A stretch of DNA of 64,000 nucleotides from Selaginella moellendorffii (taxonomy: Eukaryota > Plantae > Lycopodiophyta): positions 844,853-908,852 of the forward strand of contig NW_003314336.1 of assembly GCF_000143415.4 (NCBI RefSeq), written 5' to 3'. The position numbers were made by a program, and so were the translations under genes. Shown here piece after piece: positions 19,955 through 25,913 of this stretch. Within the stretch, counting starts at the first letter, position 1. Each line of letters opens with the position of its first letter. The notes under the pieces were generated by a model. The model searched no databases. It was not told where the DNA came from and was given only the letters and a program-made list of their open reading frames with translations.

Positions 19955-22900
19955 TCAGAAAATGTCGTCCCACTTTGTGTTCGAAGGGTCCACCGGCAAG
20001 TCGTCCATGGGATCGCTTGGTTCGTCGGGTATGCACAGGCTGGTGTAATTATCTAGTTTTGCTGGAATCATCTGCAGAAGGGAAATGTAGAGTGAGTTGC
20101 ATGAGTTCAGTAAACCTTACAGGAGGCTCTTCTTTTTGCCGGAGCAGCAGCTGAAAATTAACTGACTTGGCGAAGAAGGGGTGCTCCTTGATGTCGGCAG
20201 CTCCTCGCTTTCGACAGCCGAGCCGCGTCTCAGGATTCGGGTCCAGCAGTTTCCGTACAATATCAGCAGCATCTGAGCTAACATAGGGTGGAAACTTGAC
20301 ACGTCCGTCTATGATCCTTTGAAACACTAACTGGACGAAACACCGTGCAAAGTCAGGACGTAAACCAGAAAATACTTGATTACCTGCGGAGGATCTTCCC
20401 CGCGATTAAAAGCGCTTGTATTCGTTATCAACTCAAAGATGAGGCAGCCTAGAGCCCAATAATCGACAGCCTTTCCATGTCCCTGTCTTCGAATTATCTC
20501 CGGTGCCATATAATCTGGAGTCCCACACATGGAGTAGGTTCGTCGATTGTAGATACGCTTGGCAAAACCCATGTCAATAAGCTTTGGATAGCCGTTGTCT
20601 CCTATCAGAGTGTTTTCGGGCTTCAAATCACGGTAAACAATTCCTTTTCCGTGCATGTATTCCAGCCTGTGCTTGACAAGTCAACACGATTGTAAACAAA
20701 GACATACTCTACTTACGCCAAAAGAACAGCACCGGCATAAAATGATGCCTCAGCCTCCCTCAAAGGCCCAACTTTCTCCATATGAAAGAATAACTCGCCT
20801 CCCGTGGTCAGCTCTTGAAGCAAGTAAATCTGCATGATACTCAGAAATTTCAGCTCCAAGAAATAAGTTCAACTGTGACTTACATTCTTGTCATCCTTGT
20901 AGGTTCGAATAAGCTTGGTGATAAACGGATGGTCCATTTCAGTCATAAATAGTTTCTCATTTCTGAGATGTTCTTCCTCCTGGAGTCTTATGACCTGGAT
21001 CCAAACATGCTTGAATGATAAAATATCGAACTGGCTAACAGCACGTAAAAGGGCTCAGATATTGACGTATTAGAACCTTTGCCTTGCTGACACACTTCAA
21101 AGCATAATACTCGCGTGTCCGTCGGCAAAACACCAGCTTCACTTTGCCGAAGAGCCCTGCATACACACAACGAGCTTGCGTCAGGAGATAATAAAGCTCA
21201 ATTACAAGCTGTGACCTGTTCCGATAATTCCAAGTTCTTCCAAATCCTCATATCCAATTGTTTTAACAATCCCCTTTAATTCATTTTCCTTTTTACGATT
21301 TTCAATGAGCTCCCGGAGCGGTCCAAAGTTTGCCTCCAGCACTCCCTTGTCCAGGTAGAAAAGCTCTGCTCCTCCTGTAGATATCGTGCCTTTTAAGAAA
21401 ATGCCCGCTACGGACACAAGGATAGCAAACCTGGTCTGTTGGCATCCATTGTTCCCGCAACCATGGTGGAAGGCCTTGGCTCGTCATCCAAAAGAGCATT
21501 CTCTCCAAAATATGATCCCTTAGATAGAAGAATCTGGTCCCCCTTCTGTTTGCTCCCATCGGGTGTGGGAGTATGTACTGTTTCGATCACTGTTCCCTTG
21601 CTCACGATGTATAAACGATCACCGGGGTCTCCAGCTCGATACAACATTTCACCAGAATGTAGCTTTCTCACGCCCATGGAATGAGATAATAAGTCTATTT
21701 CTGAGCCAAAAAGGTAGTCTAAGCAATGTATTTTCCTGTGACAAAGCACTCGTGTAAGATAGAGTAAATAAAAGCAAGAAAGACTTGGCATTACCCGAGT
21801 ACTTTGGTATTTGTCAACCGGGTGAGTAACTCTTGAATAGGGCCAAGAATTGAAGTCAGCTTCGCAATAGTCACGGATAAACATATTGCCCTGGAAGATT
21901 CCACCACAGATGTTGTTTTGCAAGGTGGCCAGTAGCTTTCATCTTTTGCGCTTGCACGAGTTAAAAGGCATTCATCTCCAAAAACACCATAGGTCGTGAG
22001 AGTCCAAGGAGAGCTACAACTGCACAATCAAAGTAACGAGTTAAAATGAAAAACTGGAACAGCCAACCCACCCAATACTCTGACGAGGACTTCCACCTTT
22101 TCTAACTTTAGTCGATCCACCAAGGCCCTGTGAAAGACTGAGCAAGTCCTGGGTAGTCAGTGCACCCGCGACAACGTTGCTATTTCGTGGAGATTGAGGT
22201 GTACTGCCGGACTTAAGTAGTGAACCAAGCCTGCTACCCCAAAAGCCAATACCAGAGTCCCTTGGTTCCCTCACGTTTTGTCTAGAGGTGTAGGAAATAT
22301 GGCTGCCACGCGGTGTCATCACCATTTCGTCGTCAGCAGACTTGGAAAGACATATAGTCCCGTTCTGAACCACGTAAATTCTAGCTTCAGGCCCCAAAAC
22401 GTCACCACATTTTGTAATCTCTTCGCCTTAAGAAAGCAAAACGTATCAATAAGTGAGCTTTCAGTAGAATTAAAATAGCCTTTCAGTACCTGCGACGTGA
22501 GCGGTATCGTCAAAGTGACGGGCTAGACTGTAAAGTTGTTCAGAACTTAGCTCCAGAAATGAAGGCAATCTCTGTAAACCAAGCGCAACAAGCTGCACTT
22601 GGAGGTCCTTCCTAATATCATTAAGAAGTGCCTCAGTGAATAAACTCCGTTCAATAACAATGACAGATGTCTGGAAATCGAACACGCTTATGTTAGTCGG
22701 TATCCCATATGAGAATGTCGGACAGCTTACATGGTCAGAGGAAGCAATGAAATTCCACGAGATGACCGTCTCGTCGTTGAGAATAAGTGCCTCACCAAGT
22801 ATTTCCAACCGCTTCATAACAGCAACAGTTTCACCACGAGAATTACGAGATGAACCTCCAGCTGCACCCCAACTTATTCTAACCTGTCCTTCCTGGATAA

Positions 22901-24742
22901 TATAAATCTGAGAGATGAAAACCTGGTTACAAATGAATGAAAAAACACATAGTTACCCTATCCATAGACGATCCAGCTCGTAAAATAAACTGGCCGCGAC
23001 GATATGTCTCAACTTCAGCCTGACTGCTAAGCATGACAATGTCTCTCGTCGCGACCTTCTTCAAAACAGGAGCTTCTCGCAGCACCTTTTGAAACAAGAT
23101 TTTAGTACCAATAACGAGCACGAAAAAGTTTCAGTAGTATACCAGCGATTTAAACAGTCATTGCAGAATGGCACCTGTGCGACTGGTGATCCAGCCAAAT
23201 GACGGCTCATGATGGACTTGAACGTTGTACGGTCTACAGCCCACACAAACGCATTTGTTGTGGCTTTGACTGTCGCATTCCGGAGGCTGTCATACATGAG
23301 AGCAAGCTCTCCAAAGAAATCTCCCGGGCTTTTCCTTGTCACAAGCACGGGTGCTTCTCTCCCCTGAAGCTATGCAACATGAACGCGAGGACATGAAGCA
23401 TGGAGCAAATCTGTACCTTCCGGACAAGAACGTCAAATTCCCCAACGTCCTGTAAAGACCGATTGAAAACATACAATGTTAAAGGCCTCAAATTTTAGAA
23501 AAGATTTGTGCATGAGGTAACGGACCTTTCAAGACTTACAATGACATAAAAATTGTCTGCAGGATCCCCTTGCTTGATAATGTTTTGTCCGGATAATACT
23601 CTGATGTCCTCGAAAGCATCCACAATTTCCTCCCTCAAGCTAGGTTCCAGATCACCGAAAAGAAAACTTGCGCTGCATGATCAGCTCATGACCAGTATTT
23701 TGTGTTGTTTGGCATATATATGCACCTTAAAATCTTGCGAAGATGCTCCCTAGTGCCTTCTGACTTCGGAATGATTCTTCTGGTATAGGCTTGCACTTTC
23801 TGAAGTCCTTTATCTCTGCACGGTGACTGAGTGAGAATAAACTAAGTCATATGGTTCATTACCAGATCTACAGTGCTAGTTACCGTATTCGTTCACGCCG
23901 TTGTTTCTGAAGAACACCTTTAACAGCCAATTTCCATGACTCTGACCAATTCCGATCCTGGCTCCTGAAACGAGATACGAGATACAATAACAACACCCAA
24001 TTTAACCAGACCTCTTCGGAAGGAAATCAGCAGAAATGCTTTCTGGCGACGTGTCTCCATCTGCTGCATCCCCCTGCAACTCTGATGCTTTATGAAAACC
24101 ACTGAGGTCGCCTGCCGAGTCTTCCTGTTCAGGATCCTGTTGCTTAGTTTGCAGGTGTGTAAGAAGGCCCGCAAATAGTTCCACAACTTGTTGCATGTCC
24201 CATGAATCGACAGCAAGATTCAGAGGTTTTAATGCCAAGCTCATATTTTCTCGAAAGGCCGATGCATCAAACTCCTGGAGCTGGAGAAAAGTCTCTGGTG
24301 TGCATTAGCAAAAAATGTGCCACAATGCAAGCGCGCTTACCTTTGGTTGAAGAGTTTCCCACTTGGCGCACATACTAAGTGCTTGCTTGAAGACAGAGAA
24401 GTGCTGCGAGTTTAGTCTCGCAAACAAGCGCTCGGCATCTCTTGAAGCATTCACAAAGTCCTCGTCAGAGGCAATTCTTGTGAGTCCCTGTGGCAAAAAG
24501 ATTTCTATCCAATGCGATGCGAGGAAGTTTTGATGGATTACCCGCAGCGTATGCCGAAAGGTTTCAAGATTTGCATCCTCCAGAGCTGCAAGCGCAGCCT
24601 CCGTGTAGGAAACAAGCCCTAGAACGGAGGAAAGCATCGACAGTGAGAAGAATGGGAAGAAATCACGATGCGCATCACCTATAGAGCCAGAATCAGAAGA
24701 AGAGACTTCATTCCCTTCCCTCTCGTCCTCCGCCGAGCTCAT
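19955..24742 (-). CDS. Cyclic-nucleotide-dependent (PKG-like) AGC kinase: unknown N-terminal domain, ~4 CNB domains, kinase domain; many exons
   Basis: CNB-A: IIKQGDPADNFYVI...FFGELALMYDSLRNATV. CNB-B and CNB-C are degenerate (ILGEALIL; VFGDECLL). CNB-D: YRAGDPGDRLYIV...YFGENALLDDEPRPST. Kinase: YALK, HPFITKL, GGELF, YRDLKPEN, LIDMGFAK, CGTPDYMAPEII, DYWALG, TRLG, ending TKWDDIF* (19955-19957). Confidence 0.85.

Positions 24743-24997: not shown

Positions 24998-25913
<916 letters not shown>

What the first reader, a model, noticed from the sequence alone, without database searches (positions are those of the whole stretch)
19955..24742. Four-CNB-domain PKG-like kinase in a land plant, with a non-standard phosphate-binding cassette
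Seen: one multi-exon gene encodes about 4 tandem cyclic-nucleotide-binding domains fused to an intact AGC kinase with a PKG-like WDDIF end. CNB-A (GELAL...RNAT) and CNB-D (GENAL...RPST) keep the Glu/Arg of the binding cassette; B and C look degenerate. Known: PKA-R has RAAT, PKG has RTA(T/S), and apicomplexan PKG has four CNBs. Flowering plants lack canonical PKG and have a PP2C-CNB-kinase fusion instead; no PP2C motifs are visible here. Inference: this is a retained algal/protist-style cNMP-gated kinase whose cAMP/cGMP preference cannot be read from the usual residue.
Basis: partly seen in the sequence, partly recalled or inferred. Interest (0 to 1): 0.75.

Follow-up and report, generated by a model that had tools for sequence, protein, structure and literature searches.

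The report
Four-CNB PKG-like kinase in Selaginella
A 22-exon gene of the clubmoss Selaginella moellendorffii encodes a protein kinase fused to four cyclic-nucleotide sensor domains, the layout known from malaria parasites and algae; mosses, liverworts and lycophytes keep this family, I found no paper on it, and the Selaginella transcripts on record are mostly spliced out of frame.

Summary
[quoted passage not shown] There is no PP2C domain.

The window is Selaginella moellendorffii. The public annotation splits the locus into two partial models, SELMODRAFT_98922 and SELMODRAFT_99275. Spliced transcript contigs join the CNB and kinase parts.

Full-length orthologues occur in Marchantia, Riccia, Calypogeia, Sphagnum, Physcomitrium and Diphasiastrum. 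They form a 100%-supported clade whose branching follows the species tree. The clade is separate from animal PKG and from the seed-plant PP2C-CNB-kinase. A green alga (Dolichomastix) is the sister with only moderate support.

A model of the Diphasiastrum orthologue matches full-length Plasmodium PKG (E 1e-62). CNB-A (RNAT, family-wide) and CNB-D (RPST, Selaginella only) keep the binding Glu and Arg; B and C are degenerate.

New caveat: assembled transcripts use three out-of-frame splice sites within CNB-A and retain two kinase introns. Against decay, 20 of 26 allelic differences are synonymous.

Verdict: a real, probably functional PKG-type gene. It is a new member of a known kind, mis-annotated here, and I found no study of the family. 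The scan noted a second such gene on another piece of this genome (not examined).

The parts
19955..24742 (-). Whole coding region of the PKG-like gene: 22 exons, 3528 nt CDS, 1175 aa
   Evidence: Homology-guided model with an intact ORF and GT-AG at every intron. It aligns end to end with seven orthologues.
24679..24742 (-). Exon 1 (ATG at 24742)
   Evidence: An in-frame stop lies upstream. The intron 24678-24619 is spliced in contigs of 3 runs.
24542..24618 (-). Exon 2
   Evidence: Junctions seen.
24341..24487 (-). Exon 3
   Evidence: Junctions seen.
24012..24280 (-). Exon 4 (variable, acidic N-terminal region)
   Evidence: X6 contig piece 24011-24280. The frame is as.
23884..23964 (-). Exon 5, with the conserved NWSESWK...RRERI motif (RRERI at 23900-23886), a candidate pseudosubstrate
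   Evidence: Conserved in Marchantia, Sphagnum, Diphasiastrum and others. The depth arithmetic of X6 fits an 81-nt exon.
23726..23815 (-). Exon 6 in the conserved frame (RRIIPKSEGT... lead-in to CNB-A). Transcript contigs instead start this exon at 23826 (+11 nt, out of frame).
   Evidence: Homologue alignment. Contig pieces reach 23825/23826.
23540..23672 (-). Exon 7 (first half of CNB-A), with the in-frame donor ATT|GTAAGT. Transcript contigs extend it to 23526 (+14 nt, out of frame).
23417..23449 (-). Exon 8, a 33-nt microexon encoding DVGEFDVLVRK
   Evidence: Spliced on both sides in 3 runs. Conserved in orthologues and in the genomic contig L002.
23175..23363 (-). Exon 9 (CNB-A phosphate-binding cassette FGELALMYDSLRNAT at 23315-23271). 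Transcript contigs extend it to 23143 (+32 nt, out of frame).
   Evidence: Pfam cNMP_binding 2e-9. The best PDB match is CNB-A of Plasmodium PKG..
22605..23085 (-). CNB-B, coding in exons 10-12 (23085-22957, 22907-22731, 22670-22490; CNB-C starts at 22604 within exon 12). The cassette LGEALILNDETVISW at 22799-22755 has no Arg.
   Evidence: Pfam 2e-4. hhalign D-B 98.7%. Junctions.
21797..22604 (-). CNB-C (end of exon 12, then exons 13 and 14: 22426-22072, 22019-21795). It carries an inserted stretch of about 90 residues; in the Diphasiastrum model the equivalent stretch is low-confidence. The cassette FGDECLL... at 21982-21938 is degenerate.
   Evidence: hhalign D-C 97.6% and A-C 92% over the N-terminal half. 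Alignment.
21310..21796 (-). CNB-D (exon 15, 21735-21431, and part of exon 16). The cassette FGENALLDDEPRPST is at 21509-21465.
   Evidence: Pfam 2.6e-13. The best PDB matches are Plasmodium PKG CNB-B and CNB-D.
20166..21234 (-). AGC kinase domain (exons 16-21: 21374-21216, 21156-21077, 20994-20884, 20829-20717, 20666-20384, 20330-20121). Motifs: GTGLFGKV, YALK, YRDLKPEN, DMGFAK (DFG changed to DMG, 20575-20558), and an activation-loop Ser in RRTYSMCGTPDYMAPE.
   Evidence: Pfam Pkinase. The best PDB hits are human PKG I, then PKA-C. Motif coordinates.
20995..21076 (-). 82-nt intron inside the kinase domain. It is retained in contigs of X1 and X2, there with a 12-nt deletion.
20331..20383 (-). 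53-nt intron inside the kinase domain. It is retained in the X1 contig; the X2 contigs break at its edges.
19955..20071 (-). Exon 22: AGC tail ending in KWDDIF, then the stop codon
   Evidence: The intron 20120-20072 is spliced in X1.

Best explanation
This is the S. moellendorffii orthologue of a land-plant family of PKG-type kinases. One polypeptide carries a conserved N-terminal region, a basic RRE(R/K)I motif, four tandem CNB domains and an AGC kinase.

Shown here: the gene, its frame, its architecture, its orthologues, and the Plasmodium-PKG-like fold of an orthologue.

Inferred: the kinase is held inactive in cis by its regulatory half. The RRERI motif may act as a pseudosubstrate, about 17 residues before the RRIIPKS lead-in, which is the spacing I recall for RRGAI in PKA-RI. 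Binding of cAMP or cGMP to the two CNB domains that keep the cassette Gly-Glu...Arg...Thr (A and D) would release it. B and C would serve as structural relay modules, as I recall degenerate CNB-C does in apicomplexan PKG.

Which nucleotide it binds cannot be read from the sequence. The residue after the Arg is Asn in CNB-A and Pro in CNB-D.

A role in flagellate sperm signalling is a guess. It rests on the taxa that keep the family and on cNMP-dependent kinases in the Chlamydomonas flagellar proteome.
For: - The 1175-aa ORF is intact across 22 exons with GT-AG at every intron.
- 14 of the 21 introns are spliced exactly as modelled in contigs from 3 runs; 2 more fit by arithmetic on contig pieces. 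Raw stranded reads show minus-strand transcription.
- Pfam finds CNB and Pkinase pieces.
- The model aligns end to end with orthologues from Marchantia (MPTK2_1g01440), Riccia, Calypogeia, Sphagnum, Physcomitrium and Diphasiastrum.
- Four mutually homologous CNB units are detected.
- The AlphaFold model of the Diphasiastrum orthologue (pLDDT 74.8) matches whole Plasmodium PKG chains at E 1e-62 over about 950 columns. Human PKG follows at 1e-42.
- The kinase exon is closest to human PKG I in the PDB. The CNB exons are closest to Plasmodium PKG.
- The catalytic residues and the activation-loop Ser are kept.
- 20 of 26 differences between the window and the transcript alleles are synonymous in the model frame (P about 1e-7 to 1e-8).
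- Land plants form a clade at 100/100 that is apart from the PP2C type.
- cNMP-dependent kinases are listed in the Chlamydomonas flagellar proteome (PMC2171396).
Against: - The contigs assembled from three RNA data sets use three alternative splice sites in the CNB-A part: +11, +14 and +32 nt. Each breaks the frame. The contigs also retain two kinase introns. No productive full-length transcript was seen.
- Expression is low (contig depth 3-19).
- In Selaginella a Pro follows the CNB-D Arg. From what I recall of PKA-R structures, this removes a backbone NH that contacts the phosphate, so binding may be weakened.
- DFG is DMG.
- AlphaFold gives the RRERI segment of the orthologue low confidence (pLDDT about 30), so the pseudosubstrate idea has no structural support.
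- No biochemical data exist for any member of the family.
Confidence: 0.72

Rival explanations
1. The Selaginella copy is a transcribed gene in decay, or one kept off by unproductive splicing. The mRNA made in the sampled tissues cannot encode the full kinase. At best it encodes the 245-aa N-terminal part.
For: Three out-of-frame splice choices fall within CNB-A, each leading to an early stop. Two kinase introns are retained in contigs of independent runs. A lineage-specific Pro sits in the CNB-D cassette. Expression is low.
Against: There is no stop or frameshift in 3528 nt of modelled CDS, and all in-frame splice sites are canonical. 20 of 26 allelic differences are synonymous, including those in the CNB-A and N-terminal exons. 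Contigs drop rare variants, and 10 further joints were not shown. Intron retention also appears in an orthologue's contig from another species, so it may simply reflect low expression.
Confidence: 0.13
2. The CNB domains no longer sense cAMP or cGMP. They bind another ligand or none, as in kinetoplastid PKA, and the kinase is regulated some other way.
For: Cassettes B and C are degenerate. The selectivity position holds unusual residues: Asn in A family-wide, and a variable residue in D. [quoted passage not shown]
Against: CNB-A and CNB-D keep the Gly-Glu, Arg and Thr/Ser of the cassette across all orthologues aligned (one Sphagnum jensenii model, P0154, has Cys for the CNB-D Arg). CNB-D resembles the cGMP-binding domains of Plasmodium PKG (FGE.ALL..EPR).
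Confidence: 0.12
3. The locus holds two separate genes, a CNB protein and a kinase, as in the public annotation (SELMODRAFT_98922 and SELMODRAFT_99275).
For: Two partial models exist on the same scaffold.
Against: One contig (X2 record 5) runs from kinase exon 20 through the CNB-D exon. The junction 21734/21794 then links on to the CNB-C to CNB-A exons. SELMODRAFT_98922 joins CNB-A directly to CNB-D, skipping about 450 codons. Every orthologue is a fusion.
Confidence: 0.02
4. The gene is a protist contaminant or a recent horizontal transfer into the assembly.
For: The very short introns (49-90 nt) and the apicomplexan-like best PDB hits first suggested a non-plant origin.
Against: Exons are 100% identical to S. 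moellendorffii proteins on a 2.1-Mb scaffold. Plant-type neighbours flank the gene. Orthologues occur in bryophytes and another lycophyte, with branching like the species tree.
Confidence: 0.01

Closest known systems
Apicomplexan cGMP-dependent protein kinase (Plasmodium PKG; PDB 5DYK, 5DZC, 4RZ7)
   Same: One chain carries four CNB domains followed by an AGC kinase, and the third CNB is degenerate. The CNB-D cassette is similar: FGE.ALL..EPR. It is the best fold match for the orthologue model (E 1e-62, about 950 aligned columns) and the best PDB sequence match for the CNB exons.
   Different: Here CNB-B is degenerate as well. A conserved N-terminal extension of about 240 aa carries an RRERI motif. 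CNB-C has an inserted stretch of about 90 residues. The cassettes read RNAT and RPST rather than RSAT and RTAS. DFG is DMG. Overall identity is only about 27-28%. No apicomplexan sequence was in my trees, so the relationship between the clades is untested.
Metazoan PKG I/II
   Same: The catalytic domain is the closest in the PDB (1.4e-30 for one exon). The tail ends in W-D-x-D/I-F. Regulatory and catalytic parts are fused. A basic motif lies ahead of CNB-A.
   Different: Animals have two CNB domains and, from memory, an N-terminal leucine zipper and RTA(T/S) cassettes. They form a separate clade at 100/100.
Green-algal PKG-like kinases (Dolichomastix P0172, Gonium P0063; Chlamydomonas flagellar cNMP-dependent kinases, PMC2171396)
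   Same: Same four-CNB plus kinase layout: Pfam finds 4 CNB in Dolichomastix. Dolichomastix is the best hit outside land plants (31% identity over 81% of the query) and the sister group in the CNB-D+kinase tree.
   Different: Sister support is only 90/74. The algal proteins keep DFG and cassettes with RTAS or RAAN, and they lack the land-plant N-terminal region and the CNB-C insert.
Seed-plant PKG with a PP2C domain (rice PKG, Shen et al. 2019, summarised in PMC11638329)
   Same: CNB domains and a kinase domain on one chain. Reported to respond to cGMP.
   Different: That type has a PP2C phosphatase domain and two Pfam CNB hits. It matches this family only weakly and lies on a separate long branch. 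No PP2C is present here.
PKA of Marchantia (MpPKAR1/2, MpPKAC; PMC11032487)
   Same: CNB-based kinase regulation in a flagellate land plant. The lead-in to CNB-A (RRIIPKS...) resembles the one in PKA-R.
   Different: PKA has separate regulatory and catalytic subunits with two CNBs. This gene is a single-chain fusion with four.

Membership tests
Four-CNB (apicomplexan/algal type) PKG | Four tandem CNB domains followed by an AGC kinase on one polypeptide | tested here: met
   Pfam on exons. hhalign among the four segments gives 92-98.7%. Transcript contigs link the CNB and kinase exons. The orthologue model matches whole Plasmodium PKG.
Four-CNB (apicomplexan/algal type) PKG | Third CNB degenerate; CNB-A, B and D have intact phosphate-binding cassettes | tested here: not met
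   C is degenerate as expected. B also lacks the cassette Arg in all land-plant orthologues. A and D are intact.
Four-CNB (apicomplexan/algal type) PKG | Kinase activity switched on by cGMP | not testable with these tools
   Needs recombinant protein and nucleotide titration.
Four-CNB (apicomplexan/algal type) PKG | Phylogenetic grouping with the apicomplexan or algal proteins | tested here: inconclusive
   The land-plant clade is sister to Dolichomastix+P0179 at 90/74. The kinase-only tree is a polytomy. No apicomplexan sequence was on hand.
Metazoan PKG | Exactly two CNB domains with RTA(T/S) cassettes | tested here: not met
   There are four CNB units. The cassettes read RNAT and RPST.
Metazoan PKG | N-terminal dimerisation zipper and autoinhibitory pseudosubstrate | tested here: inconclusive
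   A conserved RRE(R/K)I sits about 17 residues before the CNB-A lead-in. No zipper was identified, and AlphaFold confidence there is low.
Seed-plant PP2C-CNB-kinase PKG | PP2C phosphatase domain N-terminal to the CNBs | tested here: not met
   No PF00481 hit in any exon or orthologue. It is present in the controls P0189 and P0204.
Seed-plant PP2C-CNB-kinase PKG | Clade membership | tested here: not met
   A separate long branch, outside the 100%-supported land-plant four-CNB clade.
PKA holoenzyme | Regulatory and catalytic subunits encoded as separate proteins | tested here: not met
   The reading frame and transcripts are continuous from CNB-D into the kinase.
Catalytically competent AGC kinase | Gly loop, VAIK Lys, alpha-C Glu, HRD/YRDLKPEN, DFG, APE, activation-loop Ser/Thr, C-terminal hydrophobic motif | tested here: inconclusive
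   All are present except that DFG reads DMG, which is invariant in land-plant orthologues. Activity was not measured.

The most novel reading that the evidence does not exclude
The land-plant four-CNB kinases are a cyclic-nucleotide-dependent kinase of flagellate-sperm plants that has gone unstudied. They would act beside PKA, downstream of CAPE-type cyclases, in sperm. Their nucleotide selectivity would be their own, set by the family-wide Arg-Asn cassette of CNB-A. In Selaginella their output would be gated by cell-type-specific productive splicing of the CNB-A exons.
Probability: 0.2. Interest if true: 0.75.

Novelty: new member of a known kind. Interest (0 to 1): 0.45.

Why it matters
[quoted passage not shown] Work in Marchantia has so far tested only CAPE and the PKA regulatory subunits (PMC11032487).

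A conserved single-chain kinase of PKG architecture exists in liverworts, mosses and lycophytes, with genetically tractable members (Marchantia MPTK2_1g01440, Physcomitrium). That gives a concrete, testable effector.

For this genome, the result corrects a split and chimeric annotation. It also flags unusual out-of-frame splicing confined to the first sensor domain.

Tried and rejected
- Non-plant host. The 50-60 nt introns suggested it. I dropped the idea once exons matched S. moellendorffii at 100%.
- A model built from the transcript junctions alone. It gives five broken frames. The conserved frame needs three other canonical sites, found through homologues.
- Alternative routes from exon 4 to exon 6 (options B-D). 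The X6 contig end at 24011, the depth arithmetic and the conserved exon-5 frame rule them out.
- Word search with single exons. I skipped it because its length filter hides full-length kin. I used the exhaustive search with the CNB-D exon instead.
- Literature. I found no paper on this family. The supplement of PMC11032487 that lists the 14 Marchantia CNB proteins is not held.
- Origin of the orthologue contigs L001-L003 (SRR4210093, SRR22405887, SRR36092045). The organisms could not be determined.
- Ferns, hornworts, cycads and Ginkgo. No named orthologue turned up. These searches score only 8000 word-sharing candidates within a length band, so absence is not shown.
Full report
**What is there.** All the coding signal in 19955-24742 lies on the minus strand. 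Pfam, run on open stretches given by reference, finds cNMP_binding at four separate places. It finds Pkinase in the last 1.2 kb, the strongest piece at E 2.6e-32. The N-terminal stretches match no family, and there is no PP2C.

**Organism.** Introns of 50-60 nt made me doubt a plant origin. However, the CNB-D exon (window:21432-21734:-) is 100% identical to EFJ25644.1, SELMODRAFT_98922. A kinase exon is 100% identical to SELMODRAFT_99275. Both lie on the same 2.1-Mb Selaginella moellendorffii scaffold. The public annotation therefore splits this locus into two partial models. The first of them joins CNB-A directly to CNB-D.

**Gene model.** I laid contigs of three runs (library type not on record, treated as RNA because the contigs are spliced) and raw stranded RNA reads on the locus.
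- 14 of the 21 introns of my model are spliced exactly in those contigs. Two more fit by arithmetic on the contig pieces.
- The raw reads (run X20) fit minus-strand transcription at low depth.
- Contigs chain the kinase exons to the CNB-D exon and on to CNB-A, so this is one gene.
- A model built from the transcript junctions alone breaks the frame.
- tblastn with the Diphasiastrum and Sphagnum orthologues pointed to three other canonical sites. With them the gene reads as 22 exons, 3528 nt and 1175 aa, with GT-AG at every intron.
- The model includes a 33-nt microexon (DVGEFDVLVRK). This microexon is also found in orthologues and in an unrelated genomic contig.

I assembled the joined model only inside scripts, from window.fa. 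It was never sent to a search or folding tool. Those tools received single exons by reference, or orthologue ids.

**The splicing anomaly.** Three splice choices differ from the conserved frame:
- In X2, and consistent with X6 (whose contig ends there), exon 6 starts 11 nt upstream of the in-frame site.
- In X1, X2 and X6, exon 7 ends 14 nt downstream of it, passing over a consensus GTAAGT.
- In X2 and X6, exon 9 ends 32 nt downstream of it.

Each choice gives an early stop within CNB-A. Two kinase introns (20995-21076 and 20331-20383) are retained in contigs. From exon 10 to the stop, the transcript-supported frame is continuous once those two introns are removed (819 codons).

I could not see a productive isoform. 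Contigs drop rare variants, however, and 10 further joints were not listed.

Against decay, the 26 positions where the contigs differ from the window inside the CDS are 20 synonymous to 6 non-synonymous. The chance expectation for synonymous changes is 23-28% (P 4e-7 to 9e-9). The synonymous sites include ones in the CNB-A and N-terminal exons.

**Family.** Full-length orthologues of 980-1250 aa occur in Marchantia polymorpha (MPTK2_1g01440), Riccia, Calypogeia, Sphagnum, Physcomitrium and Diphasiastrum. UniRef names some of them automatically as cGMP-dependent protein kinase. The others are labelled hypothetical.

The Selaginella model aligns with them from the first residues to the terminal WDD(I/V)F. 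Features shared by the family:
- a conserved N-terminal region;
- NWS.SWK...RRE(R/K)I ahead of a PKA-R-like RRIIPKS lead-in;
- a CNB-A cassette with Arg-Asn (RNAT);
- CNB-B without the Arg;
- CNB-C degenerate, with a long low-complexity insert;
- CNB-D with the Arg followed by a variable residue (Ser in most, Pro only in Selaginella);
- DMG in place of DFG, with every other catalytic motif intact and an activation-loop Ser.

Profile-profile comparison shows that all four segments are CNB homologues.

**Structure.** An AlphaFold model of the Diphasiastrum orthologue has mean pLDDT 74.8. It shows four beta-rich modules plus a kinase. Its best PDB matches are whole Plasmodium PKG chains (E about 1e-62, about 950 columns), then the human PKG R-C complex at 1e-42. 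By sequence, the CNB exons are closest to Plasmodium PKG. The kinase exon is closest to human PKG I, then PKA-C.

**Phylogeny.** In a kinase-domain tree and in a CNB-D+kinase tree, the land-plant proteins form a clade with full support on a long stem. Inside it, liverworts and mosses group together and lycophytes fall outside them, as in the species tree.
- The clade is separate from animal PKG (100/100).
- It is separate from the PP2C-type plant protein, which sits on a long branch.
- The prasinophyte Dolichomastix, together with an unnamed protein, is sister at 90/74. That is suggestive, not settled.
- PP2C-type proteins from Urochloa and Wollemia match weakly.
- I found no named fern, hornwort or seed-plant orthologue. 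The searches used cannot prove absence.

**Mechanism.**
- Shown: the architecture, conserved catalytic residues, two intact cassettes and two degenerate ones.
- Inferred from what is known of PKA and PKG: cis-autoinhibition that is relieved when nucleotide binds CNB-A and CNB-D. RRERI is a possible pseudosubstrate.
- Not readable: the preference for cAMP or cGMP. From memory of PKA-R structures, a Pro after the cassette Arg would remove a backbone NH that contacts the phosphate. If so, CNB-D of Selaginella may bind weakly.
- A sperm or flagellar role is only a guess. It rests on the taxa that keep the family, on the cAMP module of Marchantia sperm (PMC11032487), and on cNMP-dependent kinases in the Chlamydomonas flagellar proteome (PMC2171396).

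**Novelty.** The kind is known: PKG with four CNBs. Orthologues already sit in databases under automatic names. I found no paper that treats the land-plant family. A review calls plant cNMP-dependent kinases controversial.

I file this as a new member of a known kind, with family-specific traits. For this genome it comes with a corrected gene model and an unexplained splicing pattern. The scan noted a second four-CNB kinase on another piece of this genome (s1-353466). I could not examine it; it may be the other haplotype.

Noticed in passing
window 25134-25810 (+): A centrin/caltractin-like EF-hand gene. One exon's best PDB hit is caltractin 3kf9 at 3e-30. It is strongly expressed, has a 5' intron at 25000-25072, and lies head to head with the kinase gene across about 390 bp.
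   Followed up: partly
Contigs X1 record 1 and X2 record 4 run across both 3' ends, so the 3' UTRs overlap.
   Followed up: no
window 19955-24742: The public annotation splits the locus into SELMODRAFT_98922 (259 aa, CNB-A spliced straight to CNB-D) and SELMODRAFT_99275 (289 aa, kinase).
   Followed up: yes
window 21041-21052: A 12-nt stretch inside intron 20995-21076 is missing from the transcript contigs of X1 and X2. It looks like an allelic or haplotype indel.
   Followed up: partly
window 23526-23826: The three out-of-frame exon extensions (+11, +14, +32 nt) add up to 57 nt, a multiple of three. Stops in between still prevent read-through, so this may be chance.
   Followed up: partly
L001:1-2604: A Logan transcript contig (SRR4210093, species unknown) encodes an orthologue, 54% identical to model residues 318-1175. 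It retains an intron at about the exon 11/12 boundary of the Selaginella gene.
   Followed up: partly
L002:1200-8700: A Logan genomic contig (SRR22405887, moss-like sequence) carries an orthologue whose exons align piece by piece with those of the Selaginella model, microexon included.
   Followed up: partly
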